From: Adineta vaga
Taxonomy: Eukaryota; Animalia; Rotifera
Assembly: GCA_021613535.1 (NCBI GenBank)
Contig: CP075492.1
Location: 310,001 to 374,000 of the forward strand
Length of the DNA stretch: 64,000 bases
Reading direction: 5' to 3'
The notes beneath the pieces were generated by a model. The model searched no databases and had not been told where the DNA came from. It was given only the letters and a program-made list of their open reading frames with translations. Of this stretch, positions 2,609 through 45,535 are shown in pieces (within the stretch, counting starts at the first letter, position 1; every line of letters begins with the position of its first letter). Both the position numbers and the translations under genes were made by a program.

Positions 2609-5600
2609 CTATAGTTATCATAGCACATTTGTGTAAGAATAAAAACGCCAATGATGTAGAGGTGCTGAGGACGCACTCTCCCGAGTGATAGTTTCATGGG
2701 GTGTCTCTCTCTCTTTTACAAGTACGTTCAGTATTCATGCGAGTGGTAGCTAAGTACTCTCTTCAAAGATGAGCTATGGATAAAAAATAAAAATATATGA
2801 GTGGCCTAAATCACTCCACAGTTATATCAGAAGTGCCTGTAAAGTATTTTTAAATACTTGAAATATTTAATACGATTATCCTTTAGAACTCTAATTGAAG
2901 TACAGAGTGAATTCGACGTTAAGTAGCGATCCAGTAAGTTTCAGCTTTTATATAGAAAATACTTCACCATGTCTCTCTTTCGATATATATATTTACACTA
3001 ATCCCAAGGGGGAAAAAGCGGATTTAAATCAGTTAGAAATCAAATTTAAATCAAACAAATCACTTTAAATCAATTAAATCACCTTAAATCATTTGAATCA
3101 CTTTTAAATCAATTGAATCATTTAAATCACTTCTAAATCAATTAAATCATTTAAATCACTTCTAAATCATTTAAATCATTTAAATCACTTCTAAATCATT
3201 TAAATCATTACAAAAACTCTATGAAGTTATTACTGCAACTAATACAGTTAAAACATATCACACTTGTACACGTTACTGGATGCTCATGTGATATTGCGGA
3301 GCGAAAATAACTATTTCTTCGGTTTGATTTTATGACAAACATGTGCTTTCTATAGTCGTATAATATCTCGATACATAATTTCCTTTTGTCTGTCTACTTG
3401 AAATCTACTAAGACAGAACGCAAGAGAATTTTTTTTCGGTTCGTTGTTATCAGTAAGACGGAGAAATAAAGAGAAAATATTTTCTCTTCTTCTCGATTCG
3501 TTGTCGCATGTTCATTTTCATCTCATCGATATTCTAATTCAATACGTCTTCTATTCATTTGCATCCTATATACGAACTATTGTATTCTACGTACAAACAA
3601 TATTGTCTAAGAAAATAAGGAATTGAAGAAATAAATCATTTATAAGAATTCTTTTCATTTAGCAACGATTGATTAAGTTCGAAGATGATGAGTTCTATAA
3701 CGTCATACATTAATTTGTTGCGGTTCAACTATTAAACATTTTCAACTATTAAAATGATTATAATATAAGCAAATAAGTGATATATGGCAGTGATCATCTC
3801 AAAATATATTCCATGCGTTCCTGATCGATTCTTTTGTTATTTATTATATCTTCTTTGATGAATTCAAATTTCAGATGACTTTTCCTCTTCCAACTAATTC
3901 TCTTCTATTTTCTGGAGATTCATTCTACAGCATCGTTAAACAATTCTGTGGTGTTGAGGCGGTGGAATTACTTAAATTTCAGTTAATTGATACCTCAATG
4001 GATTTACTTGAAATCGATGATATCTTTTCCATTCTCTATTTCGAATCTGATCAAACTGATACGCTTAAACAAATATTAGGTTGTCCATGTAAAGATGAAT
4101 TTGGTAATTATTCATTCTTCGTTATGCCAGGAATTCGTTTGAAACTTAACAAATTTATTCATACACTTCGTTCTCTTCTACCAACTACTAATTCTGCATC
4201 GACTACCAAGTGCCTGACAATATCTTCTGATCTCATTCAACAATATCCGTTTCTGATTGATCTTATACATTGCCTCGAATCAAACTTATTCTCTAAATTT
4301 GTTTTGGACTTTGTTTCAAATATGACGTCGAATTTAACACGTTCAAAGAACTGCTTTCGTTATCAACAATCTGTGAAAGACTTTGCGACATGTCTTTACA
4401 TTCTGGGAGGAAGAACTGCATACGAGTTCATACGAATCAACATTCCAGGATCTATATCTAGTTTAACCAGCCTTCGAACAATCATTAGATCTTCAAAAAA
4501 TGAATATATTGAAGGTGAATTCTACTATGATCGTCTTAACTATTATATGGATTCGTTTAAATGCATATATGCATCCGTGGGAGAAGATTGTACTGGCGTA
4601 GTACAAAAAATACATTATGATGTTCATTCAAATTGCTTTACAGGATTCACGCTTCCACTTACAGATGGATTTCCTTCGACGCGATATTTCTCTACTGATA
4701 TATTAGCTGATCTTGAAATATGGTATAATCAGGTGGATAAAGCATCTCTTCTCAACGTATATGTCGTGCAACCGTTGTGTCCTACAACTCACACTTCACC
4801 CTCACCATTTATTCTATCAGCGTACGGTACAAACGGCAAGTATACCGCTCAAGACATTCTTAAAAGATGGTTCACCATATTTGATTCGTGTTTGAAGAGA
4901 AATATTAGGATACTCGCATTTTCAACGGATTGTGATCCTAGAAGCCTAAATGCGATGCGTAATGCAATGGGATTTTTTTCAAAATCAGTATTGCAATTAG
5001 AAGAACATCCACAGCATTTCGAAATTTCGTTTTTGAAGGTCAGTACACTATTAAAACGTTTAGGTTAAAAGCTATACGCTGGTTTTATTCGAAATATTTA
5101 GAAAAAAAATAATATCGTAATTATTTGAGTGGTAAAAAGATCTTAGACTTTTACAAACTTCGAACATTAATGAGACATTCTCGTGCAATAGAAAATACGT
5201 GAAGCTAACTGAATGGCCCTGATTTGATGGTTCCTTGTATTAGATAAGCTTAACTAAGTATAGCGATGAACTATTTTGTCAATCTGACGAAAAGCACCTC
5301 TATTTATATGCTAATTTTGTCTACTGATGAAAATCCTTCTACTTCGCAACAGCAGACACATGTGTTTGATCAAACATATACAGAATAGTCTGAAATATTA
5401 GAGGTGTTGAATGGTTAATAGCTTCTGCTAGTGGTGTTGTTTGAGTGAATAGCATCGTTTAAAAATGAAATGGGTATTTCATGACTGAATTTTGTTCCTA
5501 TCTCCCTGTTACGTATAAATAAAAATTTTTAAATTAAACTAATAAAAAACGAATCCAGTTTTCAATTCGACTTAAGAACACATGTTTTTATATTTTTATG

Positions 5601-7399
5601 AACTCTTTGATATTTTTTTCTAATATTTAGAATAGTTCATGGTTTTTTCTAAAACCACAACAACTTTTTGTCTGTTTTCAAGATGGTGTGCATATATGCA
5701 CCAAATTACGCAATCGTCTTTTGGATTCAGCAATTACACTACTGATAGGAGAAAAATATGCAAGTGTTGATTATCTTATGGAATTGATTAACAAATATTC
5801 AAAGCTCGATCATGCTCTAACAGTATCCGATGTCCTTCAAAACGATAAACAAAACTATTCATCTTGTGAAAAGATATCAAATGATGCTGTTCTTACTTCT
5901 CTTAAAAAAATTGCAAATTCTGAAGCATTACAAGCCTATCTACAAGTAATATTTCATCGATTTCTGTATTCATATAACTCACGAGAAACAATTTAATTCG
6001 ATTTAATCTTTGGTTCATTATAAAAAACAGTACTATGATGAAATCTTTTTTATAAGAATAGTCCTAAATTATCTTAAGGCTGCAGCTTTGATTCTGTCTC
6101 AAATTCTATGGAGTGCTTAAATATTTTTATTTAAATTTGATAGATTATTCGATTTGCTCGTTTGGCATTCGTCGAAAAACACACTTCTATTATTGATCGC
6201 TTATACTATTCGTGGACTGCTGTCTTTATAGTTCGTCTTTGGTCTTCATGGTTAGAAATTACAACTTATGCTGATCTAGAAGAGATAATGTCACATTTGT
6301 TACCATCCAATTCCATGGGATCTTTTTCTAAATCAAGCTTGTTCATAACCATGCCAGCTCTTTTTTCACTTGAACTAAATGTTCATAGCTTGACATACCT
6401 TGTAGTACTTGTATCAGAGCGAATGATAACTGAAGAAGCTCTAAATGTGTCGTTATATAATTCACAAATATGCGAGCAAACGTTCCGAGCGGCACGATCA
6501 ATGTCTGGTCCATTCTCATCTATTGTGAACTTTTCCGTTGATGAATTTCTTCAACGTGTCGAGAAACTAGCTGCTCTTCAAGCTATTAAATCTTCGTCTG
6601 ATTCTAATAATAACAACCTTATCTTTCCTAAACACCACAAACATTCACAACAAAAACATCAAGTACCTGTGATGAATATGACAACCGCGATCACAGAAAA
6701 ATTAATTCAAGTTACAGTTTTTAGTGCTTATCTTCAAGCTTGTCAAATTCTTTCAAGTTGCAACCTGTCGATCCTCAATCCTTATGATACAACTATATCT
6801 TTCGAAGAAGTGAATCATTTAGCATTTCAAAAGTTAACAAGATCACACTGTAAAACTTTTAGCCAGAAAGATTCTCAATTGAATAATAGCAAACAAGAAG
6901 ATGATGATGATTATGAAGAATATTTGAGCCAGAAACAGTCCAGTAGAAATAATAATTTTGATGACTACGATGAATCGATATCAAGTGATGAATCAAATAC
7001 TGATGTTCTTCCTAATGTTTCAAATTCAATATTTCGCGGAATGCGCATCTTTGACTCTATCAACAGCCATCAAAATGCATCGTTTTTTTCTGTTGAAGTA
7101 AATGGTCAGAAGAAATTCATGCATAAACAAGCTGCAAACTGGTATTTTTCCAAAAGAAAACCTACTTTATCTTCTGATCGATCAGTTAGAGTTCAAAAGA
7201 AGTGAATTATCTATTTCGTTTGTTTTCTACACATATACAATGTATGTGTATAATAAAAAAGAATGACCATTTCATTTTTCTCTTTCTCTAATTAACATAC
7301 TCAACTAACATGCAGTTCATCTTACGATAATAATACATATATCCTTAGCTAAAATGCTACTCAAAATAAAAAACATTTCATTCTAAATGTTTTCCTGAG

Positions 7400-7434
<35 letters not shown>

Positions 7435-10400
7435 CATGCATTAGATAAACTAAAATTTATGGCTTGTTTATCCTTCGATCCCTATGTTTTCGTATGTGCA
7501 GATTGATCGCTTATTTCGATAATTACTTGATAGACTAACTGGATAAAAATTAGCACGAACATTTATACGATACATGCATATTTCTAGGGAAATAGTAATC
7601 TTATGTCACCGTAAAGTCCTCATACGCTGCTCGATTTATATGAGTTTTAAACCACTTTAACTCATTTAAATCATTTAAATCATGTAAATCAAATAAATCA
7701 CCTTAACTCATTTAAATCAAGCAAATCATAAATCGCTTTTTCCCCCTCGACTAATCCCTTCGTTTTCTTTAACAAAGAAAGTAAATGAACTACATATACT
7801 ATAGGTAGAAGCAGAAGCAAATAAAATATATTCTCTATGAGAAACTAAAACGAACTAGATTTTGTCTTTCGAACACTCACAAATGAATCAAACAAGTGTC
7901 AACTATATATCTTTCATAGCTGCGATGGCTAAGTGCTTATGTTGTTTAAGATAAATTGAAACTATATTCTGTGCAAACGTCAGTGGCATCATTCATAGAA
8001 TAAATCTCAACAAATCAAGAACGAAATACTTCTCATAATTCTTACACTAGGGCATGGCCTACAATGTTAGTCACGATTTTAGAGAGGAGGAGTGCAAATA
8101 TCACTGTCTATAAAGAGAGAAAAGCTGTAGAGAGCAGTTTGATATGTAAATCATAACAATTATAGTTGTCATCTACACAAGACACGTCTATGAAAGATTA
8201 TTCGTAATATGGATCATCAACAACAATAAAATTTTAATCACAACAAGACAGAAACCTACCTTCACTTGTGATATTTGATTGTCGATCAAATATAACATCA
8301 TCGATTTCCTTAGCTTCCTTCGGCAATATAAGATCAAGTTTCGATACAGCTGTCCCACACATGTTCACTTCATCCACTATTCCATTCGATACAAACAATT
8401 GTTCAATACAATACGAAAATCGTTCACCTATATCTGTAACAGTTCCATCATCAAATAAATCATGAGAACATATAAAATACAATGATAATCTATTGTTTTG
8501 TAATGTTGGATTATAAACAAATGTTAACATGAAATCAAATTTAGCTATTTCATCTGATTGTTCTAATGATACTTCTTCTAATTTTGTATCATTCATCGAT
8601 AAGGAACTCTCACTTTCAGATAAAGTGATAAAATCGAACATTGTTTCCAAAAATGTAAGATTCGATTGGTTGGCATGAAAGTCATTAAGAATATGTTGAA
8701 GTGGATAATGAGAATGTTTAAGTATTGATAAACACATTTCTCTTACAGAATGAACAACTTCATCAAATGACCAATCTCCATTGAGTTGAATACGATATGG
8801 TAATGTTGCTACAAACATTCCTATCATATTATACAATTCAGATCGATATCGATTGGCATTTATACTACCAACACATAAATCAGTTTGATTGTGAGATAAT
8901 TTAAATAGAAATACATAAAATATCGATAGTCCAAGTTGAAAAATGTAAGATGATGTGATGATGCATAGTTTAGAAATGATGTACATGTAACATCATTTAG
9001 TATTATTTGAGTTGTAGCACCTAAGCCAGATCGATGATGAATTGATGAACGAGATCGATCATATGGTAATGATAATGAATGTTGAAGATCACATCCTTGA
9101 AGTTGAGAATACCAAAACTCACGAGATAAGGTCATATCCATGACATGTTCATGAACAGAATAATCAACATATTGAAATGAATTGTCATCTAGAGATAGCG
9201 AACTATGATCTTGATAAGCAAGAGAAAGATCACGAATAAAGATTGATGTTGATGCACCATCAAAGAAAGCATGATGAACAGTAAATAATATTAAATCATC
9301 TCTATTCAACATATCATCTTCTTCATTTGAACTGTGTGTGTGAGAACGAAGAATATGACAATTAATGACATGTCCTTTTGATAAATCAAATAAATCACAT
9401 TTATTCAAGATTCTCTTCACAATTTCATTCATATCGCCATCTTCTCTGGAAACATTCACTATTGAAAAACCAAATGTTTCACTATTATTGCTTAAAGTAT
9501 TCATATCTCGACAATCTTGTACAATAATACCATTTTGATCAAGATAAAGTGCTGTTCTCAGAATCTGATGTTTTCTAATGATACATTGATATGCATGATA
9601 TAATCGTGAAATTGATATATGATGGTCATTTATCGATGATAGACGATATATTAATGGAATAACATACATATTTGTATTGTTATCTGTCGAAGAAGAAGAA
9701 GAAGAAGAAGAAGAAAATCGAATATTTTCATCTAAGAAAATGCGTTCTTGAGCAAAGGATGCTTTCGCTAAAGTGAGAAATAGAATGTGGTTATTAGAGT
9801 ATTTTTGAGATTATATTTGTTACCTGTAAGGATATTTAATGAATGCCAAGAATGATCATCTTTACTCAATTCGGTATTGAGAATCTGATGAATAAGTTTT
9901 GCATGATCAATGATAGTTGGATGTTGAAATAGATCAGTAATAGCAATGGAATTTATTTCTAATCGAAATTCTACTTTATAGTGATGTAGAAGTTGCATAA
10001 TAATTAATGAATGGCCACCAATAGAGAATATGTTTGTATTAGTAGAGATTTGTTTTTGTTTCAATAGATCACACCATATATGATGAATAATAGATTCAAT
10101 TTTATTTGTTGGTTCTACTAAATCGTTAGTATTGTTGAGTTTAGTTGAAGAGAGAACAAGGGAATCAGGTGAGGGCAATCGTTTTCGATCAATTTTTCCA
10201 TTTGGATTGAGAGGTAATTTATCAAGAATAATGAAACGAGATGGAATCATATGCGGTGGAAGATGTGATTGACAATATTCATGTAATTCGTTTTCGCTGA
10301 TGACTGAACTTTGAACATAAGCAACTAAATGATCTTCACCCCATTTCACCACAACACAAGTAGATATCGATGTAATACTAAGTAGGCATCGTTCAATTTC

Positions 10401-13400
10401 ACCAAGTTCAATCCTTTGTCCATGTAGTTTGATTTGAAAATCTTTTCTTCCCTCATAATAGACAAGACCATTACGATCTAATTTGACAACATCGCCAGTT
10501 TGATAAAACTTTTGTTCATCGATTTCAAGAATAACTTTTGTGGTCAGATCGTTACGATAAAGATAGCCAGCGAATACACCGCCACCACCAATAAATAGCT
10601 CACCTTGTTGGCCAACGGGCACGTGTTGAAAATACATATCCAATACTTTATAATGTTCATTAGGTAGTAATCTTCCAAGAGCGATAATTGATTCACTGGA
10701 TCTGGAACTTATACGATGATAGAAGGAAACAACTGTGGTCTCAGCTGGCGCGTATATATTGTACAGAGTACAGTTGTTGTCAATGTGGCTTTGTAAGCGA
10801 TGAACAAGTCGTTTCGATATAGGTTCTCCTAGAAAGCTTAGATGTGTTTTCAACATACTTTTCATAGTTAACTTACCTCCAAAGCACAGTGATCGTAGCG
10901 TTGACAAAGAATCGCAGTGTAGACGTTCAATAGCATCACATAAATAATCTAAGAAGGTTGGAACTGGTGCAATACATGTAATTTTTTTAGTTTCGCATAT
11001 GTTCATAAAATACAAAAAGTCCATGTTTCCATATGGATGTAAAAGCACAAGAGATGAAGACAAAAATAAACTACCAATGATCTCCATGGTATGCACATCA
11101 TATGTAGGAGCACATATTTGCGCCATAACATCATTTTTCAACAGTATTCCACTGTGTTGTAAACTTCGTATAAAATTTGAGAAATTCCGGTGCCTAGTTT
11201 GAATCTGGAAAAAAGCAACAAACTGAGGGTGACTCAATACAAAGTGTTAACAACATACTGCTTTTGGTACACCTGTCGAACCACTTGTGAAAATGATGTA
11301 AGCTATATTATCAGATGATACCGTTATCTTTGAAAGTTTCTGTGACTCGATATCGCCACTGAAATCTGTATCAGTCAGCAATATATCAATATCCAATAAA
11401 TTCTGAAGGTCAGAGATCTTTGCTACAGTTGGCTGATGAACAATAACAACGTGAGACATCGTTTGTTGTACAAGAGCATGTAACCGATCTTCTGGATCTC
11501 GAGGAGATAACGGACAATATACACCACCTGCCATTAGAATTCCCATTATGCCAATTACCTAAAACACGAGAAACTTCCTGATTATAAACATCAAAAAATT
11601 ATCCAACGCAACCTACCATTGATATACTTCTCTCCACACATTGACAAATAATATCACCAACATTTACACGATATTCATTCAATAGAGTCAAAGACAATAC
11701 TTGAACATAATATAACAGTTCACAATATGTCAACGACTGTTCATCTAATTCTACAGCTAACTTTTGTGAATAGATCATCGCTTTAGAAACAAACTCATGA
11801 TGAATGCATTTGACAGATGGATATGATATTTGTGTATTATTCATTGATTGTACAAGTAATTGTTCAGTTGGTAGTGTTAATGATAATTCATACAGTGGTT
11901 TCTTCGATTGACTATCAATAATAGATGCACATAGATCATACAACAGTGAATGAAATTGTTGTGAAATCTTATTCACAGTTTCCACGTGAAACAAATCCAA
12001 TGATGCATCGATTGTACATGAAAGTTCATTAGGATCCAAAGTATGATGAAAAGTGAGAATAAAATCAAATTTACTCATCACTTCATCTTCACTAATCTCA
12101 ATCGAATATGGTGCTAAAATAAGTTCATTATCACCAAGATTTACTTTGTCTTGATCGTCATTTGTCATCGATGTTATAAACTGGAATGATGTATCAAGAA
12201 ATGCAGGATTTGATAGATGAGGATGTTGTGCAAGAATACGTTGAAGTGGAAAATATGAATATTTCATACTATTTGTCATCAAGACTCGCATTTGTTGAGT
12301 GAATTGATGAAACGAAGAATGAGGATCAAGTTGACATCGAAGAGGAATAGCATTGACAAACATTCCAATTAGAGATCTAAATTCATCTCGATAACGTCCA
12401 TCTGTATTCATTCCAATGCATAGATCTTGTTCTCCATTGGTTAATTTGAATAAGAAGATGAAATAAGTCATGAGTGACAAATATTCAAGTGATATGTTAT
12501 TTGTGGATGCATAAGTGAGAAAGTAATGTGAAAGATCTTGTCCCAAATCAAAAGAAATAGATGTTCCACGGCCAGTTCGATGTTCATTTGCAAGACGATA
12601 TCGATCATATGGTAATGAAAGAGATTGATCAAGTTTACTATTATGTAGAGCATCAAGCCAAAACATTTCTGCACCAGTCATTGGCATTTGTTGTTCGATA
12701 GCAGCATCTATACAGAAGAACAAGTGACAAATGAGAAAGAAAACGTGCGATGTTGAGGATGTATACTTACAATCAAGATAACGAAGGTTCGTTTCATCAT
12801 TGTTGTCGTTAAGTAATTGACTTGTTGTATATGCTTGATTAAGATCATGAAGAAATATATCCGTTGATGGAAAATCAAATGCTGCATGATGAAAATTGAA
12901 GATGATTATATCTTTATGATGAAGTAGATGATCGGAAGAGATGTGTTTGTAATAAACAAGATGACATCGAAAGACAAGACCTTGATTAAGACTAAAGAGT
13001 CGAGGATTTCGTTTTTCTTCATGTATGATATTGTTGAGTTGTTCTTGTGTTTCATAAGTACTCTCAATAAAGGTAAATAATGTCTTTTGATCTGTGGTGA
13101 CGTCTATGATTCGTTGCATCAATATATTTTTATTTGTGTCGAAAATGAATGCTGTATGAAGTGCAAAATGTTTGTCGATAGTGAGATAGAGTGCATGTTG
13201 AAGTTGTTTAACTGATATGGTATTGTTTGTAGAAAGATGATAAATGAAAGGCATGTTATAGATTGCTACTTGTGGTTGATCAAGATCGAATCGCATCTGT
13301 TCACCGAGCCAAATGCGAGCTTGTGCATATGATGCTGGTGCTATAGTTATCATAGCACATTTGTATAAGAATAAAAACGCCAATGATGTAGAGGTGCTGA

Positions 13401-16400
13401 GGACGCACTCTCCCGAGTGATAGTTTCATGGGGTGTCTCTCTCTCTTTTACAAGTACGTTCAGTATTCATGCGAGTGGTAGCTAAGTACTCTCTTCAAAG
13501 ATGAGCTATGGATAAAAAATAAAAATATATGAGTGGCCTAAATCACTCCACAGTTATATCAGAAGTGCCTGTAAAGTATTTTTGAATACTTGAAATATTT
13601 AATACGATTATCCTTTAGAACTCTAATTGAAGTACAGAGTGAATTCGACGTTAAGTAGCGATCCAGTAAGTTTCAGCTTTTATATAGGAAATACTTCACC
13701 ATGTCTCTCTTTTGATATATATATATATATATTCACACTAATCCCTTCGTTTTCTTTAACAAAGAAAGTAAATGAACTACATATACTATAGGTAAAAGCA
13801 GAAGCAAACAAAATATATTCTCTATCAGAAACTAAAACGAACTAAATTTTGTCTTTCGAACACTCACAAATGAATCAAACAAATGTCAACTATGTATCTT
13901 TCATAGCTGCGATGGCTAAGTGCTTATGTTGTTTAAGATAAATTGAAACTATATTCTGTGCAAACATCAGTGGCATCATTCATAGAATAAATCTCAACAA
14001 ATCAAGAACGAAATACTTCTCATAATTCTTACACTAGGGCATGGGCTACAATGTTAGTCACGATTTTAGAGAGGAGGAGTGCAAATATCACTGTCTATAA
14101 AGAGAGAAAAGCTGTAGAGAGCAGTTTGATATGTAAATCATAACAATTATAGTTGTCATCTACACAAGACACGTCTGTGAAAGATTATTCGTCATATGCA
14201 CCTTCAACAACAAGATATTTTTAGTTCGAACAGAAACCTACCTTCACTTGTGATATTTGATTGTCGATCAAATATAACATCATCGATTTCCTTAGCTTCC
14301 TTCGGCAATATAAGATCAAGTTTCGATACAGCTGTCCCACACATGTTCACTTCATCCACTATTCCATTCGATACAAACAATTGTTCAATACAATACGAAA
14401 ATCGTTCACCTATATCTGTAACAGTTCCATCATCAAATAAATCATGAGAACATATAAAATACAATGATAATCTATTGTTTTGTAATGTTGGATTATAAAC
14501 AAATGTTAACATGAAATCAAATTTAGCTATTTCATCTGATTGTTCTAATGATACTTCTTCTAATTTTGTATCATTCATCGATAAGGAACTCTCACTTTCA
14601 GATAAAGTGATAAAATCGAACATTGTTTCCAAAAATGTAAGATTCGATTGGTTGGCATGAAAGTCATTAAGAATATGTTGAAGTGGATAATGAGAATGTT
14701 TAAGTATTGATAAACACATTTCTCTTACAGAATGAAAAACTTCATCAAATGACCAATCTCCATTGAGTTGAATACGATATGGTAATGTTGCTACAAACAT
14801 TCCTATCATATTATACAATTCAGATCGATATCGATTGGCATTTATACTACCAACACATAAATCAGTTTGATTGTGAGATAATTTAAATAGAAATACATAA
14901 AATATCGATAGTCCAAGTTGAAAAAATGTAAGATGATGTGATGATGCATAGTTTAGAAATGATGTACATGTAACATCATTTAGTATTATTTGAGTTGTAG
15001 CACCTAAGCCAGATCGATGATGAATTGATGAACGAGATCGATCATATGGTAATGATAATGAATGTTGAAGATCACATCCTTGAAGTTGAGAATACCAAAA
15101 CTCACGAGATAAGGTCATATCCATGACATGTTCATGAACAGAATAATCAACATATTGAAATGAATTGTCATCTAGAGATAGCGAACTATGATCTTGATAA
15201 GCAAGAGAAAGATCACGAATAAAGATTGATGTTGATGCACCATCAAAGAAAGCATGATGAACAGTAAATAATATTAAATCATCTCTATTCAACATATCAT
15301 CTTCTTCATTTGAACTGTGTGTGTGAGAACGAAGAATATGACAATTAATGACATGTCCTTTTGATAAATCAAATAAATCACATTTATTCAAGATTCTCTT
15401 CACAATTTCATTCATATCGCCATCTTCTCTGGAAACATTCACTATTGAAAACCAAATGTTTCACTATTATTGCTTAAAGTATTCATATCTCGACAATCTT
15501 GTACAATAATACCATTTTGATCAAGATAAAGTGCTGTTCTCAGAATCTGATGTTTTCTAATGATACATTGATATGCATGATATAATCGTGAAATTGATAT
15601 ATGATGGTCATTTATCGATGATAGACGATATATTAATGGAATAACATACATATTTGTATTGTTATCTGTCGAAGAAGAAGAAGAAGAAGAAGAAGAAAAT
15701 CGAATATTTTCATCTAAGAAAATGCGTTCTTGAGCAAAGGATGCTTTCGCTAAAGTGAGAAATAGAATGTGGTTATTAGAGTATTTTTGAGATTATATTT
15801 GTTACCTGTAAGGATATTTAATGAATGCCAAGAATGATCATCTTTACTCAATTCGGTATTGAGAATCTGATGAATAAGTTTTGCATGATCAATGATAGTT
15901 GGATGTTGAAATAGATCAGTAATAGCAATGGAATTTATTTCTAATCGAAATTCTACTTTATAGTGATGTAGAAGTTGCATAATAATTAATGAATGGCCAC
16001 CAATAGAGAATATGTTTGTATTAGTAGAGATTTGTTTTTGTTTCAATAGATCACACCATATATGATGAATAATAGATTCAATTTTATTTGTTGGTTCTAC
16101 TAAATCGTTAGTATTGTTGAGTTTAGTTGAAGAGAGAACAAGGGAATCAGGTGAGGGCAATCGTTTTCGATCAATTTTTCCATTTGGATTGAGAGGTAAT
16201 TTATCAAGAATAATGAAATAAGATGGAATCATATGCGGTGGAAGATGTGATTGACAATATTCATGTAATTCTTTTTCACTAACGACTGAACTTTGAACAT
16301 AAGCAACTAAATGATCTTCACCCCATTTCACCACAACACAAGTAGATATCGATGTAATACTAAGTAGGCATCGTTCAATTTCACCAAGTTCAATCCTTTG

Positions 16401-19400
16401 TCCATGTAGTTTGATTTGAAAATCTTTTCTTCCTTGATAATAGATACGACCATTATGGTCTATTTTGGCAAGATCACCAGTTCGATAAAATAACATATCA
16501 TCGATATAAATTACTGCTTTCGATGTTAAATCATCGCGTTCAAGATAGCCAGCAAAGACGCCTACTCCACCGATAAATAGCTCTCCTTCTTCGTTGAGCA
16601 TCACACTCTGGAAGTGCTCATTCAAAATTGTTAGACGATAATTCAGCAGCGGCCGACCTATTGGAACACCTTCACTTTCGATAGTGCAATGCAAAAGATA
16701 ACTAGTACAAGCAATAGTAGATTCTGCTGGGCCATATAGATTCCAGATGTTACAGCTTACTATGCTGATGCTGGAAATTAAGTTTAATAAACTTGAATTA
16801 AATGCATCTCCTGTTAAAGCAGAAAACTAGCCCGATGATATAGCAATAAACATATAGTCCGCAACTCACCGATGCTACAGACTGACCGAAGATGTTTAGC
16901 AACATGACCAAGCCTGTAATCCCATATGTACTTGAAAAAACTGACAAGTAAACTAGGAACAGTGTGTATGTATGTAGTTTGTTTGTCGTGTAACACCCTC
17001 GATAGATAATCAAAGTCAATAGTTCCTCTCGGATGAAGCATAATTAATGTAGCACCTTTCGAGAGAATACCAAGTATCTCTTGAACATGAATATCGAAGG
17101 AACATCGTGCCATTTGTACTGCAGTATCTTCTTTATTAAACGAGCCTATGAAGGTCAAAGAATGCATACATTCATTGAAACTGCCATGTCGAACTTGAGC
17201 CTAAAAAGACAAAGAGAAAGAGAAATTCAACAAAAAGAAACAATGAACGCGCACCGCTTTCGGTACCCCAGTTGAGCCACTTGTGAATATGACGTATGCA
17301 ATGTTTTCTGGTATCACTACAATGTTTGACAACTGTTCAAAGTGTATATCATTTTGTGTGTTATTATTAGTCAATATCAAATCAACATTGACTAAGATAT
17401 TTTCATCATATTGCTTATTCCTTGTTAACCAATGCACAAGGACAAGACGACTATGAGTCTGTTCTACAAGCGTATGTAAACGATGTGGTGGATCTCGCGG
17501 TGATAATGGACAATATACACCACCTGCCATTTCAATTGCCATTATACCGATGACCTAGAGTGAAGAACAATCTTTCACTGATAATAACAGATACTTTTCT
17601 GATTCATCTACTTACCATTGATATACTTCTCTCCACACACTGACAAACAATATCACCAACTTTTACATCATATTGGTTCAGTAAAGTCAAAGACAATACC
17701 TGAACATAATACAACAGTTCACAATATGTCAACGATTGTTCATCTAATTCTACAGCTAACTTTTGTGAATATATCATTGCTTTGGAAACAAATTCATGAT
17801 GAATACAGTTGACAGATGCAAATGATATTTGTGTATTATTCATTGATTGTACAAGTAATTGTTCATATGGCAATGTTAATGAGAATTCATACAGTGGTTT
17901 CTTCGCTTGACTATGAATAGATGTTGACAACTGACACAACATTAAATGAAATTGCTGTGAAATCTTATTCACAGTTTCCACGTGAAACAAATCCAATGAT
18001 GCATCGATTGTACATGAAAGTTCATTAGGATCCAAAGTATGATGAAAAGTGAGAATAAAATCAAATTTACTCATCACTTCATCTTCACTAATCTCAATCG
18101 AATATGGTGCTAAAATAAGTTCATTATCACCAAGATTTACTTTGTCTTGATCGTCATTTGTCATCGATGTTATAAACTGGAATGATGTATCAAGAAATGC
18201 AGGATTTGATAGATGAGGATGTTGTGCAAGAATACGTTGAAGTGGAAAATATGAATATTTCATACTATTTGTCATCAAGACTCGCATTTGTTGAGTGAAT
18301 TGATGAAACGAAGAATGAGGATCAAATTGACATCGAAGAGGAATAGCATTGACAAACATTCCAATTAGAGATCTAAATTCATCTCGATAACGTCCATCTG
18401 TATTCATTCCAATGCATAGATCTTGTTCTCCATTGGTTAATTTGAATAAGAAGATGAAATAAGTCATGAGTGACAAATATTCAAGTGACATGTTATTTGT
18501 CGATGCATATGTGAGAAAGTATTGTGAAAGATCTTGTCCAAAGTCAAACGAAATAGATGTTCCACGACCAGTTCGATGTTCACTTGCAAGACGATATCGA
18601 TCATAGGGTAATGATAGAGATTGATCGAGTTTACTATTATGTAGAGCATCAAGCCAAAACATTTCTGCACCAGTCATTGGCATTTGTTGTTCGATAGCAG
18701 CATCTATATAGAAGAACAAGTGACAAATGAGAAAGAAAACGTGCGATGTTGAGGATGTATACTTACAATCAAGATAACGAAGGTTCGTTTCATCATTGTT
18801 GTCGTTAAGTAATTGACTTGTTGTATATGCTTGATTAAGATCATGAAGAAATATATGCATTGATGGAAAATCAAATGCTGCATGATGAAAATTGAAGATG
18901 ATTATATCTTTATGATGAAGTAGATGATCGGAAGAGATGTGTTTGTAATAGACAAGATGACATCGAAAGACAAGACCTTGAGTAAGATTGAAGAGTTGAG
19001 GATTTCGTTTTTCTTCATGTATGATATTGTTGAGTTGTTGTTGTGTTTCATAAGTACTCTCAATAAATGTAAATAATGTCTTTTGATCTGTGGTAATGTC
19101 TATGATTCGTTGCATCAATATATTTTTATTTGTGTCGAAAATGAATGCTGTATGAAGTGCAAGATGTTTGTCGATAGTGAGATAGAGTGCATGTTGAAGT
19201 TGTTTCACTGATATAGTATTGTTTGTAGAAAGGTGATAAACGAAAGGCATGTTATAGATTGCTACTTGTGGTTGATCAAGATCGAATCGCATCTGTTCAC
19301 CGAGCCAAATGCGAGCTTGTGCATATGATGCTGGTGCTATAGTTTAGAAGAATTATTTTAGTTTTTATTTGTGTCATGTCGATGAGAGTACGAAGGGTGT

Positions 19401-21398
19401 GATTTTTTTTAGCCAACATTCTGTTTCTCGCTGAAAGGTTTAGAAACAAGTATAAAATCTCAGATTCAAGGGAAGAGAAAATTGGGTGATGATGGAAATG
19501 GATGGGTGACAACAGGCACAGCTTGGTACAATATTTCATCTGAAGCTTCATTCATGTAGTTTCCAAAGAACTTTAACTCAACTGAAATCAGAAATCGCTC
19601 TTATCCTCTATTTTCACTGTTCAAATGTTTATGAATCACAATGTGGATCAGACTCGATTGTATGACCATTTTTATTAGGTTTGTCCGTTTGCTTAGTTTG
19701 TAGCGAATTATATCCTCTAAGATATTATCGACAAAGATTTTAATGAAAGATTGGTATTATATGTCTATATTAGTCCGTCACCGTGAGTATCAACATTATC
19801 TAATCGAAATAAAAGAATATACCTTCATTTTCAATAGTTTGTAATCTAAAAAAGACAGCTCTTTTTATTTCGTCTATATCTTCTGGTAAGACGAGTGATA
19901 GTTGGTAAATAGGCATGTCAGAGTGTCTAGTAATTGAGTTATCGAGTGCTTGAGAACCGAAAAGTTGCGTCAGTATGTGTTTAAAACGCTTTGCAAGTAG
20001 ATCAACATCAGTTTGATTTTGATATATATCAGCCGAACAATCAAAAAAACATTCGATACTCTTTGCATGATGATCATGTGATATTGTAAGAAAGGTATCA
20101 AATGCCACTACTCCATTTCCATGGAGTCGATCTCGATCAAAATACATACCGAGATCAATATCACCATCTATAGTGAATTCTTTATTATTTTTTGCTGTTA
20201 ATGATGACACTAATGATTCATATTGAAATAATATTGATGGTAATGCTTGTTGGTCTCGTTGTTCATATGAATTAATAATATGCTGATAAGGTAAATAAGC
20301 ATGTTCTAGAATATTGTTACTTAATTCTTGTACTTTTCGTGTAAGATAACTAAATGAACCTTCTGGTTCCATTTTCATTCGATATGGCACAACGTTAACA
20401 AACATTCCGATCATATTTTCCATTCCTTGAGATCGATTTGCCATAACACTTGCTATACATAAATCATTTTTATCATCATCATTGACTAATTTCATTAATA
20501 ATATATAATAGCAAGCAAGACATAATGAAAACATAGTAATATTATTTTCTGTAGCATATAGTGCCATTCCGTCAACAAGCTGTTGATCTAAAGTAAATGC
20601 AACTGAGTAGCTACGACCAAATGATTTTTTATTTGTTTTATTTTTATTAGATATAAAATCTTGTGTTTTAGTCCAATCGTATCCATTCATAAGATTGGAC
20701 CAAAATCGACGTGCTTTATTCATTTTAGAATCTGTACTTGTATCAGCTAACATTGCCTGTTCATATAATGCAACGTCGATATATTGTGGAATCAACAATG
20801 TTGGTTGCTGATGACGATTAATCCAACAAGCTTGTTTAAATGCTTGAATAAATGGTTTAGCTGAATTAGCATCCAATGCGATATGGTGAAAACTAATAAC
20901 AATTAGATCATTTTCATGTAATGATACGTCATGATAATCGTCAGTTCGTTCTATTATGTGACATCGTAAAACTTTTCCTTTTTCCATATCGAAATGTTTT
21001 CGAACAGACTCATTTGTAAGAAGACGATCGAGTTCTTCTAATGTTGCAACATTTCTTGAATGTTCAAATGAATAAATAGCATCAACAAGAGGAAGAATGT
21101 ATTGTTTGATTTGATTAGTTTCCGGATCAAAACGAACAGCAGTACGAAAAACCATGTATTGTTCAATTAATATAAGTAAAATCGAATGGATACGTTCGAT
21201 TAGTAATGAACCTCTTTTGATTATGAATGGTACTATAAGATTATAGACCGATAAATCAGAAGATTCAAAATTAATCTTTTCATGAAGCCATATTCGTTGT
21301 TGAGCCAATGAAGCAATAGTTTCTGTTCGACCTGAAATTGTGAGTTTTGGTTGTTTACGTACTTTTGTTTCGTTTATGACATATTGACGTGAAAACAT
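1..21398 (-). CDS. Multi-exon, multimodular nonribosomal peptide synthetase (C-C-A-T-C-C-A-T-C-C-A...), continuing past the left window edge
   Basis: The ORF fragments join in frame across GT-AG introns at 19822-19337, 18766-18704, 17615-17555, 17254-17201, 16869-16811, 15805-15750, 14241-13341, 12770-12708, 11616-11559, 11258-11205, 10876-10829, 9823-9768, 8259-2609, 2038-1976, 884-824, 523-462 and 130-74. C motifs: ASxAQxRIW/F and HHxxxD. A motifs: YIIFTSGSTGVPK, NLYGPAE, YRTGD, GRKDFQIKLHGQRIELGEIE and NPNGKIDRK. T motif: IFSIGGHSL. There are two 1-nt homopolymer deletions, at ~15449 and ~8941. Confidence 0.9.
3005..7749 (+). mobile_element. P-superfamily DNA transposon (4745 bp) inserted in an NRPS intron
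   Basis: TIRs CAAGGGGGAAAAAGCG (3005-3020) and CGCTTTTTCCCCCTCG (7734-7749). 8-bp TSD ACTAATCC at 2997-3004 and 7750-7757. The empty site with a single ACTAATCC is visible in the paralogous intron at ~13737. Subterminal TTAAATCA arrays at both ends. Confidence 0.93.
3875..7205 (+). CDS. P-element/THAP9-type transposase, 3 exons (3875-5038, 5631-5945, 6144-7205), ~846 aa
   Basis: Phase-0 GT-AG introns join the three ORFs with no stops. P-transposase-like motifs: AYEFIR..IPGS.SSL.SLR, FSTDCD, QDGVHICTKLRNRLL, DKQNY and SQICEQTFRAARS. Confidence 0.82.
8260..9767 (-). CDS. NRPS extra condensation domain exon (copy b; 1-nt deletion near 8941)
   Basis: Near-identical to 14242-15749, including a (GAA)9 poly-Ser tract. 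Contains HHAFFDGAS. Confidence 0.85.
9824..13340 (-). CDS. NRPS module 2: C-A-T (5 exons)
   Basis: C domain with HHAAFDFPS. A domain with TYDVHTME, SLCFGGE and YNIYAPAETTVV. The T domain (GGHSL) has the same protein sequence as in module 1. Confidence 0.88.
14242..15749 (-). CDS. NRPS extra condensation domain encoded by one phase 1-1 exon (copy a; 1-nt deletion near 15449)
   Basis: ASFAQERIFL...HHAFFDGAS...MIGMFVATLPYR. The exon is 1508 nt, or 1509 (3n) after restoring the A that is present in copy b. Confidence 0.85.
15806..19336 (-). CDS. NRPS module 1: C-A-T (5 exons)
   Basis: C domain with HHAAFDFPS. A domain with SFDIHVQE, SVCSIGDA and WNLYGPAESTIA. T domain with GGHSL. Confidence 0.88.
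19823..21398 (-). CDS. NRPS first exon: N-terminal (putative starter) condensation domain
   Basis: Motifs ASLAQQRIWL, HHIALDANS, QYIDVA and MIGMFVNVVPYR. It ends at GAAG|GTATATT, a phase-1 donor at the same position as in the later C exons. It is not similar at DNA level to the repeated C exons. Confidence 0.85.
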
Positions 21399-22495
21399 TT
21401 TTCAGGAAAATAAATCAATAAATTTTGATTAATTGAAAAAATGAATTGAAGAAGCTTAACAAAATCTAAAAGTTTAAAATAAGATTATAAAAACGAAATA
21501 GATATTTCGATTTCATTCGACTCCTATTAGAATACATGAGACAATAAAACATAAAAACTAATTGAATTATTGTGATATTATAATAAATATTCTAAAATAA
21601 GCATTAGTTTAGTATTATTAGTGAATTCAATAATCAAAATACATTTTAACTAAAAAGATATTTCGGCAGAAAATATCGCATTATTAAAATAAACATAAAA
21701 TACCACAGACAAAAGCACAAATATTGTCCTTTGTTGTTAGCGTCATTGGATATTACTTCATGACGCTACCTTCTACATAGTTGTTTTCTTTCTTTTCTAT
21801 ACATATATATACACATATATATGTATATCTTCTTTCTCTTTCTTTCCTGTCGTCTTTTAGTTTTCGTTGATTATCATGTCCGTTCTCATGATGATTTCTG
21901 TGATTGTATTTCTTCTTTGTTTTCTTCTCTTTTCTATTTTTTTTCTCAGATCATCTCTGATCTGTATTTATATTATTGTTTTTCTTTTTCTCTCGTCAGT
22001 CTTTTGTTATCATTTTCTTTAGTGTTTTATTTGATTTCATCCAATAAAACACCATTATCATCTTTCCTCATCTCATCCACATCTATTTCTTCATCTCCTC
22101 ATCCATTCCAGTCATCTCCGGTAGGATATTTGACGTGATTCTTGATTTCACATCAGATCATACTTTCGTATAGTTGTTCAGCTTACGATACATTCGTTAG
22201 CTGGAGATTCATCTTCATCCCCTGATATAAGAGACTCACATTTGTCAATAAAATTTACAGAGAGTATCTTTGAAACAATTTTGTTTTGATATAATTTTTG
22301 AAGAATGCTAAACTTCCTAACACTGATTTAGCATTTTTCTGAGTTTATGAAATTTACTTTAGAGTTCTCGGGTTTTAATGACATAGAATCTTATGACTAC
22401 TTTTACAGTGCGATGTTTGCTAGGTGTTAAGATTAGTATATGAAAAAGAGTACAGACTAACTGATTATTGATCTATGTTCGAATGATTAAAAAAT

Positions 22496-25400
22496 TTAAT
22501 TTTGATCATTTAAGAGGAATAGCTGAGCATCGACAATACCAGAATGAGTTTTTAATTGTTCTAACATTGCATTGGCAATATTTTCTTCTTGATGTTTCTG
22601 AATAGCCACTAATTGATAAGGACCGAGTGGTTGAATACGACGCATTTGTGAAATTAGTTCTTGAGCACATGCTGATATGATATTAGTACTAGATGATTCC
22701 GTAATTGAAGGCATTTGTAACATATAAATAGTTTTGCTCGATAGTTTACTAATGAAAAATTTTGAAAGATTATCAATATTAGCATTTCTTGCTGTGTCGA
22801 TAATACAAAAATAAATAGAAGAACTGCTATTTTGTTGTGATTTTTGAAGACAAATAACATTGTCTATACCAGTAAATGTTGAATTAGTAGATAATTTAAT
22901 ATCATTTTCATTAATAATATCAATATCTGTATCACTTTCTTTCGTATTTGATGAAGTAACCTGTTGTCGTCGTGTATGAAGTTTGTCATAAACTAATGTT
23001 GCAATTGATTCAATTGAAAGTCCTTGAAGTAGATCAGCTATTGGTATAAAAATACTTGTTTCTTGTCCTAACCAATTATATAATGATATGGCAGCTAATG
23101 AATCCATACCTTGACTAATAAGTGATTTATCAATTAAAATATGATCATTCGTAGATGCACCTAAAAGTCGCGTTACAGTTTTCTGTATTCGTTCAATAAT
23201 AGTCTCTTTTCGATTATAATCAAAATCGTTTGTTTTATTTATTTCTGACGATGATAATATATCATTCAATTTCATTGCAAGAGAACGCTTTTCAACAATT
23301 TCAGTCAAATAAGATGTTGCTAAATTATGACGATTTTTATATAATAATTTCCAATTAACAGCAAAAATAACTGGATAGGAAGATATATATTTATATTTAT
23401 GAATACGTTCAATTAATTCAAATACACTTATTGTCGGTACCATATCAAAACCTTCTGCCATTTTTAAAGTAATAAGTGTATCACGATGTCGATGAAACAT
23501 TCCAGCACCACTAACAGCTGGTAAGCTAATTGAAAGAGCTGGTAAATTAAGTTCTTTCATACGATAATTTGCAAGTGTATCAAGAAATTGGTTACCAGCA
23601 TTATAACCACCAGATGATATGTCAAGTAAATGGTTTCGAATTGATGAAAACATAATAAAAAAGTGAATTGGTGTATGAGTAAGTTGTGTTGCTTGATGAA
23701 GATTCCAAGCACCACGAACTTTAGCTGGTAAAACACGTGAGAAATAATCTTGTGTTAAATTATATAAACTACGATCTTCTGATACAACAGCACTATGAAT
23801 AATACCTCGAACAGGATAAGATGTTTGATTAAATTTTTCAATTAAATTATAAACTTGTTGAAAATTTGTTACATCAACTTGAACAACATCAACCTGAGCA
23901 TGATATTTATTGATTGTCTGTTTTAATCGTAACCAATCATTATATTGTGGATTAGAAGGTTGTTCAAGTTCAATTAATGTTCGACGGCTCATAAGTGCTA
24001 TGTGCTTAACACCCCGCTTTTCTATCATCCAACGAGACATTGTTAAACCAAGACCACCAAAACCGCCAGATATAAGAATTGTTCCATGATTACATACATC
24101 CGAAGAAAACATTTCATCATTATTATCTAAAAATATTTATTAAATATAACAAAATAGGAAAACTAGAAATTACCTTCAATCAGAATTATGCCGATTAGAA
24201 TTGCTTAGTATTCAATGCATAGTGGTTCATCAGAGTTAGTTAATCGAATAACAGTTTTTGCCTATAATATTCCACTACTCAGTCTTGTCATAAATGCTTC
24301 GATTATCTTGGAGTTGGCTCATAAATGACTGTTGATTCAACTTGGTTTTAATCTACCTTGAACAATTAAATCCATCATTTCTTGTAACATTTTGTGCAAA
24401 TACAATTTAGTTGTGAGAGGGCGAGCGAAACCAAATCAATACATGTAAGCTACAGTCTGATCGCAATTCAAACATAGATAAATCAGTTTTACCAAAAATA
24501 TCTCGTTTACCCCATTCAATAAAATGACCATGATATGCAAGTAATTTCATAGACTCTTTTAATAATGAACCTGATAATGAATTAACAATAATGTCAACAC
24601 CATTAGGTAAAATATGCAGTATATCATCAACAAAACTCATATTTCGACTATTAAATACATGTTCAATACCATAATATTCACGAAGAAAACGTCGTTTTTC
24701 TTCTGTTCCAGCTGTGGCTATAATTCGAGCACCAATTAGTTGACAATATTGAATACACATTTGACCAGCAGCTCCTGTTGCAGCATGAATAAGAATTGTT
24801 TGATTACGATGAAGATTAGCACGATATTTAAGTGAATAAATAACTGTCATACATGGAACAGGCATACCTGATAACTGTTCATAAGTAAGAGGACATTCTG
24901 CTGGTATACGTATTATATTGATCGAATCAACAATAACATGTGAATGAAATACACCATCAGTAGAGATACCTAAAATATTATCACCTACTTGATATTTAGT
25001 AGTAGGACATGCACGTACAACAGTACCAACAAAATCTGAACCCGGTTCAGTATCTCGATTAACTAATGGTTGATCTTGATCAGATTGTGCAAAAATACGC
25101 GTATGAGGATAAAGACCACGTGCTTTGAGTACATCACGGAAATTAATACCAACACTATGAATACGAACTTCAATCTTGCCTGGTGGTAATTCATGAATTC
25201 TATTCTCTTTAATCCATGTTAAATCAGCAAGAAAACGAGATGTTGGTACACAAAGACGAAATGGATGTTGATCAGCATCTTGCTGAGGAATAATAGGAAT
25301 AGCTTCTAGTTTATTCATTTCAAGATTATCATCATTTACTTGTTGTAACATTTCATAATGCCATGTTATATATTTGATTTGATTTTGATTTTGATTTGTA

Positions 25401-37695: not shown

Positions 37696-37769
37696 GGGTG
37701 TGGGTGTGGGTGTGAATGTCAGATAGATGTATTACCCACACCGACACCCACCCTCACCCACCCACACCC
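37696..37769. repeat. Inverted telomere-like unit (TGTGGG)n-spacer-(CCCACA)n
   Basis: GGGTGTGGGTGTGGGTGTG, a ~21-nt AT-rich spacer, then CCCACACCGACACCCACCCTCACCCACCCACACCC. Confidence 0.75.
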
Positions 37770-38656
37770 AATGCGTCGATCTGCAGATGTAGATGACGAA
37801 TAAAGAATCCCATTTTAAGGATGGTATCGACTTCCAATGTTCGTAGAGCAAAATTAAGCTTTGGATAGAGGAACTGACAGTTATAGGTATACCACCAAAT
37901 AGGTGGATGTAATTGGTATTCTCGTTCGAATCTGGCTATATTGTCCCGTTCGGTTGGATTATCTGAGAATTGTTCACGAGAGTAGTCGCCTAATTTGCTG
38001 ATCATTTGTGGTTCGTCGTCTATTTCTAGAAGAATTTCTTTGAATAGTTGGGTGTACATAAAAGATGGCTCGAGATGGTCATGGTTTTGTTGTTGATTGA
38101 ATGAGTCCAGTGTAGTACTTTCTGCAACGAAACTCATCGGGGTGGCATCTTGGTTGCATCGCTGTGCTGCTTGTTGTAAGGCCATGTACATTGGCGTGAT
38201 TTCGTTGTATATGCCCTTGATTTTGTACCAATCCTGCGTCCATTGTTCTTGTTGTTCTTTGTCACTACAAAAGACAAAAATGGCATCCAATTGAGTGATG
38301 GTATCATGGATCTTTGGCACGACAGTTTGACCGATTGAACCTGAGATAATCAGGAAGATCTTAACCTCCTTGATTGCATGAAGATATTCGATGCATGGAT
38401 TGATTTCGGTAAAAGTATCTATGGTGTTGACAACTCCTCGAAGTTGCGTTAATGAGTCGTGAAAATCTTCGTTAGTTTGATCGATGTTAGCATCTAACCA
38501 AACCAGTACAAAATTTTGCACAAAATGCATACGTCTCAGTCTTCCATCAGTTCTGATTGTAGTGGTAGTGTATAGTGCCTCGTTGGATGAGAAGGGTGCT
38601 ACCGTGTTTTTGTTTGTAGGTACAGAGTCACTGGCTGTCATTGAGTTTCGATCCAT
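37770..38656 (-). pseudogene. Truncated ART-TPR family gene (N-terminal part only)
   Basis: Aligns by eye with the N-terminus of ORF 56818-59970 (LVWLD, SFMYTQLFKEIL, PIWWYT, LNFALRT, KMGFFI). It breaks into the telomere-like tract before the YRGQ catalytic motif. Confidence 0.8.
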
Positions 38657-42733: not shown

Positions 42734-42835
42734 ATTGATAGTCGATATTTTGTGATGGCTAAATAAAATAAACAGTTACTTATGATATATTTACAAGAAC
42801 GAACAGATAAACTCGATGTTGCAGTGCAAGAACTA

Positions 42836-45495: not shown

Positions 45496-45535
45496 TAGTT
45501 AAGAATCTCTTGCTCAATTTCTCTCTCATCTGGGC

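What the first reader, a model, noticed from the sequence alone, without database searches (positions are those of the whole stretch)
10451..17950. Natural A-core swapping: near-identical modules with different substrate-binding cores and a sharp breakpoint at the A8 hinge
Modules 1 and 2 are near-identical from the GRKD (A8) motif onward (junctions ~16433 and ~10451), through A-sub, T, C and most of the 0.9-kb intron. Their A-cores are strongly divergent. Modules 2 and 3 are near-identical up to the splice donor after ERSISM (11616 / 884) and diverge right after it. Module 1 begins to diverge earlier, at ~17950. Manual alignment to GrsA pocket positions gives DIQHCILIAK (module 1), DVMACGIVVK (module 2) and DDQTTG... 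(module 3, incomplete), so three different pockets. A-core recombination is an established diversification route in bacterial NRPSs. Here it appears in a spliced eukaryotic gene.
Basis: partly seen in the sequence, partly recalled or inferred. Interest (0 to 1): 0.85.

Follow-up and report, generated by a model that had tools for sequence, protein, structure and literature searches.

The report
Identical NRPS scaffolds around old pockets
In a giant, intron-containing peptide-synthetase gene of a bdelloid rotifer, recombination keeps the repeated modules almost base-for-base identical, except for an old stretch in each module that chooses the amino acid; this pattern is known from bacteria and is seen here in an animal.

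Summary
Modules 1 and 2 (minus strand) differ by one substitution and two homopolymer indels over 14230-16218. They become unalignable (about 45-50% identity) immediately upstream of the first codon of GRKD (A8 motif) at 16433 and 10451.

The pattern covers the whole gene. It is a KS-AT-DH-ER-KR-ACP PKS followed by 11 NRPS modules over about 94 kb. All 11 modules share the same 3' boundary, and so does a paralogous cluster 1.25 Mb away.

The reading "A-core swapping" is only partly supported. Core trees group modules by type across three paralogous clusters (dS 0.4-1.1, dN/dS 0.08-0.24). Flank trees group modules by cluster, and AU tests reject each topology on the other data. No donor above 82% identity exists for the module-1 core.

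The best explanation is concerted evolution. Intragenic gene conversion homogenises the scaffolds, introns included. The old pocket-coding islands are too diverged, and probably selected, so they escape.

Independent short-read data reproduce the unique cores. They also show a flank depth that fits the seven assembled copies, so assembly collapse is unlikely.

The scan reached the same reading earlier on other DNA of this genome (s1-482554, s1-502044). This is a new member of a known kind.

The parts
19803..31268 (-). PKS part of the same assembly line, in several exons: KS, AT, DH, ER, KR, ACP, then a first condensation domain
   Evidence: Pfam hits in order: ketoacyl-synt, Ketoacyl-synt_C, Acyl_transf_1, PS-DH, ADH_zinc_N, KR, PP-binding, Condensation
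17616..19336 (-). Module 1 'up' exon: condensation domain plus the A-domain N-terminus, ending in ERSISM. It is 91-100% identical in all 11 modules. RNA contigs show an in-frame 63-nt intron at 18704-18766
   Evidence: Pfam Condensation; identity matrix; donor GTAAGT at 17615; joint 18703>18767
17555..17615 (-). 61-nt intron at the 5' edge of the variable region (GTAAGT...TAG)
   Evidence: Sequence context. M2 and M3 diverge exactly here
17255..17554 (-). Module 1 exon 2 (A2 and A3 motifs). The first ~100 nt are semi-conserved, then it varies. In some module pairs this exon is still shared (A3 = A4 = A7, 100%)
   Evidence: Diversity profile; shared tracts; Pfam AMP-binding 60-187
16870..17200 (-). 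Module 1 exon 3: A4 motif FDIHVQE and pocket positions 235-301. This is the centre of the old island
   Evidence: dN/dS 0.08-0.23 and dS 0.43-0.90 against orthologous cores
16434..16810 (-). Module 1 exon 4, variable part (A5 NLYGPAE to A7 YRTGDL), ending 1 nt before GRKD
   Evidence: A read contig at 16438-16669 starts at the branch point
14242..16433 (-). Homogenised scaffold of module 1: A8-A10 (Asub), T domain, a 56-nt intron at 15750-15805, and a second condensation-family domain. From 14230 to 16218 there is 1 substitution against module 2, and six more lie at 16219-16283. Seven modules of the gene share it
   Evidence: The intron is confirmed by the RNA-contig joint 15749>15806. Reads restore an A after 15447
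13341..14241 (-). 901-nt intron between module 1 and module 2. Its first 505 nt are ~96% identical to the intron after module 2
   Evidence: No RNA-contig depth at 13426-14225
11617..13340 (-). Module 2 'up' exon (condensation domain plus A N-terminus)
10452..11616 (-). Module 2 variable region (intron, A2-A7). Its pocket differs (YDVHTME, NIYAPAE). It has a 99% twin in module 10, 76 kb away, and 78-84% orthologues in clusters B and C
7750..10451 (-). Homogenised scaffold of module 2 (A8 onward, T, second condensation domain, start of the following intron)
3700..7300 (+). Insertion with plus-strand ORFs inside the long intron between modules 2 and 3. It is probably a low-copy mobile element and is not part of the synthetase
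   Evidence: A ~100% copy at C3:18621109-18624709 and 73-77% copies elsewhere; no Pfam hit
885..2616 (-). Module 3 'up' exon
1..884 (-). Start of the module 3 variable region. It has a third pocket type (FDDHLQD) and runs off the window. The rest lies at C3:309703-310000

Best explanation
The window holds the first three of eleven modules of a roughly 94-kb hybrid PKS-NRPS of a bdelloid rotifer (genus Adineta). The gene is presumably of horizontally acquired origin and now carries introns.

The modules undergo concerted evolution. Repeated intragenic gene conversion, or unequal exchange, between neighbouring modules keeps the scaffold near-identical. The scaffold is the condensation domains, the A-domain N-terminus, Asub from the A8 hinge onward, the T domain and the introns.

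Each module's pocket-coding A-core is an old sequence of a distinct type. It is too diverged from its neighbours for homologous exchange, and chimeric pockets are presumably selected against. Conversion tracts therefore stop at its edges.

The 3' edge falls at the conserved A8 motif in every module. The 5' edge varies between the ERSISM intron and the A3 motif. Cores of the same type within a cluster are homogenised as well.

Shown here: the mosaic, the incongruent trees, the age of the cores and the purifying selection on them, the distance dependence, and splicing. Inferred: gene conversion as the molecular process, homology limitation and selection as the cause of the sharp edge, and differing substrate specificity.
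For: - Eleven modules: the up exon is 91-100% identical, the first 290 nt from A8 are 95-100% identical, and the cores fall into 8 sequence types.
- Mean pairwise diversity over the 11 modules drops from about 0.35 to 0.06 and then 0.02 within one 30-nt window at 16434.
- The same 3' edge, within 3-6 nt, is seen in all tested pairs of cluster A and of paralogous cluster B (p from 1e-11 to 1e-26).
- The core tree groups by type across clusters: (A2,A10)+(C3,(B5,B9)), (A6,A11)+(B7,B10), (A3,B8) and (A1,B1). The up and down trees group by cluster. AU tests reject each grouping on the other partition.
- A2 against C3 is uniformly 78-90% identical along the whole module. This is what an unconverted pair looks like.
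- Orthologous cores have dS 0.43-1.09 and dN/dS 0.08-0.24. M1/M2 flanks have 1 substitution in 2 kb, including an intron.
- Same-type cores are homogenised in parallel in both clusters: A2/A10 99%, A6/A11 100%, B5/B9 98%, B7/B10 97%.
- Up-exon divergence rises with physical distance (rho 0.41, Mantel p 0.003).
- No donor for the M1 core exceeds 81% identity.
- Reads: unique-core contigs have 0 differences in runs from 2015 and 2021. Flank depth is 5-10 times core depth, which fits the 7 assembled copies. Contigs break at 16427 and 16438.
- The model itself was published for bacteria (PMC4256081).
Against: - Conversion events are inferred from patterns and were not observed.
- Flank conversion and core transfer are formally symmetrical for any single pair.
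- The gamma-type core occurs with two different downstream architectures (A1 and A7 against A4 and B1), so some true reshuffling of cores relative to scaffolds did occur.
- Only de Bruijn contigs of short reads were available. No long read was seen spanning a module.
- RNA contigs do not cover the M1 core, so expression of this particular module is not shown.
- All DNA runs may come from one laboratory clone.
Confidence: 0.8

Rival explanations
1. Modules 1-3 are recent tandem duplicates, and different A-cores were later recombined into them from donor modules (true A-core swapping, as inferred for bacterial NRPSs).
For: - The M2 core has a 99% twin in module 10.
- The gamma core is found with two downstream architectures.
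- Shared sub-core tracts show that exchange can enter the A-core: A3 = A4 over 355 nt and A4 = A8 over 224 nt.
- Bacterial precedent exists (PMC8097286).
Against: - No donor above 82% identity exists for the M1 core, and the best hits are 79-81%. Within the cluster, modules 3, 5, 8 and 9 likewise have no twin.
- The cores have orthologues in clusters B and C with dS 0.4-1.1.
- The A2-A10 high-identity tract is about 3.6 kb and runs well into both flanks. It is not limited to the core.
- Flank trees follow cluster and position.
Confidence: 0.13
2. Assembly or polishing artefact. The identical flanks result from consensus collapse of repeats in a long-read assembly.
For: - There are two 1-nt homopolymer errors in the flanks. 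Reads contradict the one at 15447, and the M2 counterpart of 14921 is likely also an error.
- Subtelomeric NRP/PKS regions are said to be hard to assemble (PMC11258130).
Against: - Illumina-derived contigs from three studies reproduce the unique cores exactly and break at the core/flank junction.
- The flank-to-core depth ratio of 5-10 fits the 7 near-identical copies in the assembly.
- Variant positions between copies are retained.
- The same pattern appears in clusters B and C and, according to earlier scan notes, elsewhere in the genome.
Confidence: 0.04
3. No recombination. There is extreme purifying selection on the scaffolds and diversifying selection on the cores after duplication.
For: Scaffold interfaces (C-A, Asub-T) are functionally constrained (PMC8097286).
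Against: - Introns and synonymous sites are identical too.
- Cluster-specific branching of the flanks against type-specific branching of the cores cannot arise without exchange.
Confidence: 0.02

Closest known systems
A-core exchange units in bacterial NRPSs (Baunach et al. 2021, PMC8097286; also Calcott 2020 and Booth 2022 as cited in PMC9205934)
   Same: The mosaic is confined to variable portions of the A-core. The C-A linker, Asub and the Asub-T interface are kept. Breakpoints lie near conserved core motifs, including the A8 hinge. There are several alternative breakpoints inside the A-core.
   Different: The host is an animal and the gene has spliceosomal introns, one of which coincides with a 5' breakpoint. 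Here the cores are the old part and the flanks are the converted part, and no donor was identified. All 11 modules and a paralogous cluster share one 3' edge.
Concerted evolution of NRPS/PKS modules (Medema et al. 2014, PMC4256081) and GRINS in assembly-line PKSs (PMC8256042)
   Same: Scaffold domains branch by cluster. Internal recombination homogenises them. Domains that have diverged enough, or are functionally selected, escape.
   Different: The earlier work is on bacteria. Here homogenisation includes introns and a 0.9-kb inter-module intron, and it lies in a subtelomeric region of a eukaryotic chromosome.
Bdelloid rotifer NRP/PKS clusters (Nowell et al. 2024, PMC11258130; PMC10531068)
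   Same: These are subtelomeric, horizontally acquired PKS-NRPS genes of Adineta. About 40 clusters are reported in the chromosome-scale assembly.
   Different: In the passages read, those papers mention duplication and recombination of modules only in general terms. They give no module-level mosaic or breakpoint map.

Membership tests
NRPS adenylation domain (ANL superfamily) | AMP-binding and AMP-binding_C profile matches followed by a carrier domain | tested here: met
   Pfam PF00501, PF13193 and PF00550 on the exons of M1 and M2. PDB matches to LgrA, TycA and GrsA (1amu) A domains, E 1e-81 to 8e-38
NRPS adenylation domain (ANL superfamily) | Core motifs A2-A8 and A10 lysine, and Asp235 for alpha-amino acids | tested here: met
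   The motifs are visible in the translations: GGVYCPL, TSGSTGxPK, FD/YD, NxYGPxE, GELxIGG, YRTGD and GRKDFQIKLHGQRIELGE. NGKIDR aligns to NGKVDR of LgrA. The Asp position was set by motif anchoring only
Hybrid modular PKS-NRPS | KS-AT-(DH-ER-KR)-ACP followed in the same orientation by C-A-T modules | tested here: met
   A single transcript across all parts was not shown
Natural A-core exchange (bacterial type) | The A-core has a different phylogenetic history from the rest of its module | tested here: met
   AU tests in both directions, p from 1e-5 to 1e-102
Natural A-core exchange (bacterial type) | Asub and the C-A linker stay native, with breakpoints inside the A-core or at A8 | tested here: met
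   The 3' edge lies 1-6 nt before GRKD in all pairs. The 5' edge lies between A1 and A3
Natural A-core exchange (bacterial type) | The exchanged core is younger than its flanks and traceable to a donor | tested here: not met
   The best genomic match of the M1 core is 81%. The cores are older than the flanks
Concerted evolution by gene conversion | Paralogous units within a locus are more alike than orthologous units between loci | tested here: met
   Flank trees group by cluster. Flanks are 99-100% identical within a cluster and 82-88% between clusters
Concerted evolution by gene conversion | Homogenisation includes neutral sites (introns, synonymous positions) | tested here: met
   One substitution in 2 kb, including the 56-nt intron, and about 96% identity over 505 nt of the long intron
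Concerted evolution by gene conversion | Direct observation of conversion tracts between haplotypes, strains or species | not testable with these tools
   Only contigs of one species label were available

The most novel reading that the evidence does not exclude
The A8-hinge edge is a selected, reusable exchange-unit boundary in an animal assembly line. On this reading, frequent gene conversion in a bdelloid subtelomere (perhaps driven by repair of desiccation-induced breaks) keeps all scaffolds interoperable. Pocket cassettes could then be duplicated or moved between positions, which would let an asexual animal reprogram a lipopeptide quickly. Possible traces of such moves are A2/A10, A6/A11, and the gamma core found on two downstream architectures.
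Probability: 0.25. Interest if true: 0.65.

Novelty: new member of a known kind. Interest (0 to 1): 0.45.

Why it matters
- It shows that the bacterial rule of NRPS evolution also holds in a horizontally acquired, intron-bearing gene of an animal. The rule is: keep the C-A linker, Asub and T, and vary the A-core.
- It gives a very clean natural map of where exchange stops, with one 3' edge at the A8 hinge shared by 11 modules and by a second cluster. That is directly useful as an engineering boundary.
- It corrects the direction of the inference: the scaffolds are young and the pockets are old.
- It warns that module trees and copy counts in rotifer NRPS genes are shaped by conversion.

Tried and rejected
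- **Stachelhaus codes against GrsA.** The codes were therefore set by motif anchors, with GrsA numbering taken from memory. A first regex pass missed several modules.
- **Epimerisation domain.** The idea that the second condensation-family domain is an epimerisation domain is not supported. The top PDB matches (Txo2, TycC, LgrA) bear no epimerisation-domain name, though their domain types were not checked.
- **RNA support for module 1.** The RNA-like contigs cover only the shared flanks and have zero depth on the M1 core. The same call does show splicing of the shared parts.
- **Raw long reads.** None were available. Every run was served as contigs.
- **Earlier findings.** A search by words returned nothing. 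A search by place with one word worked.
- **Joined spliced model.** The joined protein was never built for, or sent to, a search tool, so no whole-domain fold or full-length homology search was done.
Full report
**Setting**

The window is C3:310001-374000 of a 100.8-Mb genome in six contigs with about 31% GC. The closest named proteins are from the bdelloid rotifers Adineta steineri and Rotaria, at 43-66% identity. An earlier scan note (s1-502044) also names that species. I did not verify the species name directly.

**The gene**

On the minus strand, Pfam finds KS, AT, DH, ER, KR, ACP and a condensation domain between 31268 and 19803. About 6-kb units follow. Each holds a condensation domain, an adenylation domain split over four exons, AMP-binding_C, a carrier domain and a second condensation-family domain. 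The nearest solved relatives of that second domain (Txo2, TycC, LgrA chains) bear no epimerisation-domain name.

I set exon borders from reading frames and GT..AG sites. RNA-like contigs from a 2024 study confirm three points:
- a 56-nt intron at 15750-15805 and an in-frame 63-nt intron at 18704-18766;
- an exon end at 14242;
- no depth over 13426-14225, inside the 901-nt inter-module intron (14241-13341).

The joined step was left out.

**Checking the observation**

- GRKD starts at 16433 in module 1 and at 10451 in module 2.
- Downstream of that codon the two modules differ by six clustered substitutions at 16219-16283. Between 14230 and 16218 they differ by one substitution and two 1-nt indels in A-runs.
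- All four read sets restore the A after 15447, and none shows the deletion that module 2 carries opposite 14921. Both frameshifts therefore look like assembly errors and the modules look intact.
- Upstream of 16433 the sequences are about 45-50% identical for roughly 850-1150 nt. Differences fall from 65 per 200 nt to 4 per 200 nt at the boundary (p = 1e-17).
- Modules 2 and 3 are near-identical up to the ERSISM donor and diverge right after it.
- Module 1 begins to differ from about 17944.

**Beyond the window**

Genome searches with the cores and the flank, plus DNA fetched to the left of the window, show eleven modules between C3:329344 and about C3:237700. The last module ends in a carrier domain followed by a region with hexapeptide repeats.

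Over the eleven modules:
- The up exon is 91-100% identical.
- The first 290 nt from A8 are 95-100% identical.
- The downstream part falls into three architecture classes. One of them is shared by seven modules at more than 99.5% over 1.8 kb.
- The cores fall into eight sequence types. A2 = A10 (99%), A6 = A11 (100%), A4 ~ A7 (92%), and five are unique.
- Motif anchoring gives nine distinct pocket codes, all keeping the Asp of alpha-amino-acid activation.

Mean pairwise diversity collapses within one 30-nt window at 16434.

**Which part is old**

I fetched three paralogous loci:
- cluster B, ten modules at C3:1.57-1.66 Mb;
- cluster C, eight modules at C3:19.87-19.94 Mb;
- a single module (D1) at the start of C1.

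The maximum-likelihood tree of the cores groups modules by type across clusters, with 94-100% support for the main types. Trees of the up exon and of the A8-onward region group modules by cluster. Within cluster A they form a ladder that follows physical order. AU tests reject core-type clades on the flank data (p from 1e-5 to 1e-102). They also reject flank clades on the core data (p from 1e-9 to 1e-34).

Further points:
- An orthologous pair that escaped homogenisation, A2 against C3, is uniformly 78-90% identical along the whole module with no boundary.
- Orthologous pocket exons have dS 0.43-1.09 and dN/dS 0.08-0.24.
- The best genomic match to the module-1 core is 81%.
- Same-type cores are 97-100% identical within clusters A and B but only 77-78% identical between them. 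This points to homogenisation wherever homology allows, not to independent recent duplication in each cluster.
- Up-exon divergence rises with distance along the gene (rho 0.41, Mantel p 0.003).

**Edges**

The 3' edge lies 1-6 nt before GRKD in every tested pair of clusters A and B. The 5' edge varies:
- the ERSISM donor (A2/A3, A6/A7);
- 70-100 nt into exon 2 (A9/A10/A11);
- the end of exon 2, 355 nt further (A3 = A4 = A7);
- a graded edge in module 1.

One pair, A4/A8, also shares the last 224 nt of the core. The minimal island is therefore the A4-A5 pocket region. This matches the "variable portions of the A-core" described for bacteria in PMC8097286.

The A2-A10 high-identity tract is about 3.6 kb and extends into both flanks, so it is not a core-only swap.

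**Artefact check**

Contigs built from short reads of 2015 and 2021 reproduce the unique module-1 core with no differences (17069-17528 and 16438-16669). Their depth is 12-30. Flank contigs have depth 70-240, a ratio that fits the seven assembled copies. Contigs end at 16427 and 16438, where the graph must branch. No long read was available.

**Conclusion**

The mosaic and its sharp A8 edge are real and highly non-random. The best explanation is concerted evolution of the module scaffolds by intragenic gene conversion, with old, selectively maintained pocket islands escaping. This is the model drawn for bacterial synthases in PMC4256081, and it is related to GRINS in PKSs (PMC8256042).

True reshuffling of cores relative to scaffolds has happened at some point, because the gamma core occurs on two downstream architectures. 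It does not explain the M1/M2/M3 pattern.

The same reading was reached earlier in this scan for two other loci of this genome. Published work on rotifer NRPSs, in the passages I read, mentions module recombination only in general terms.

Noticed in passing
window 3700-7300 (+): Three plus-strand ORFs (424, 121 and 353 aa, no Pfam hit) sit inside the 5-kb intron between modules 2 and 3. The stretch has a ~100% copy at C3:18621109-18624709 and 73-77% copies on C3 and C6. It is probably a recently active low-copy mobile element.
   Followed up: partly
window 15447 and 14921 / 8938: There are single-base differences in A-runs between the otherwise identical modules, and each breaks a reading frame. 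All four read sets restore the A after 15447. The module-2 deletion opposite 14921 is not seen in the reads. These are likely homopolymer errors of the assembly.
   Followed up: partly
C3:299904-304111 and C3:267277-274364 (left of the window; L016-L019): The A-cores of modules 4 and 7 are interrupted by insertions of 4.2 kb and 7.1 kb at the position of the short intron that splits the GGE motif in the other modules.
   Followed up: no
L012:5648-8098 (-) = C3:235648-238098: The last module ends in Asub-T followed by about 600 residues with bacterial hexapeptide-transferase repeats, in place of a recognised thioesterase or reductase release domain.
   Followed up: partly
window 10827-10874 (module 2) compared with module 10: The 48-nt intron after GG in module 2 is in frame and free of stops, so ORF scans read through it. 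The 99% twin in module 10 has a stop there, which reveals the intron.
   Followed up: partly
window 18704-18766: RNA contigs show an in-frame 63-nt intron inside the condensation-domain exon. A second contig replaces 18704-18795 with 38 other letters and probably comes from a paralogous module.
   Followed up: no
window 37696-45498: Another first-stage note reports head-to-head telomere-like units here, which would fit a subtelomeric setting. I did not examine it.
   Followed up: no
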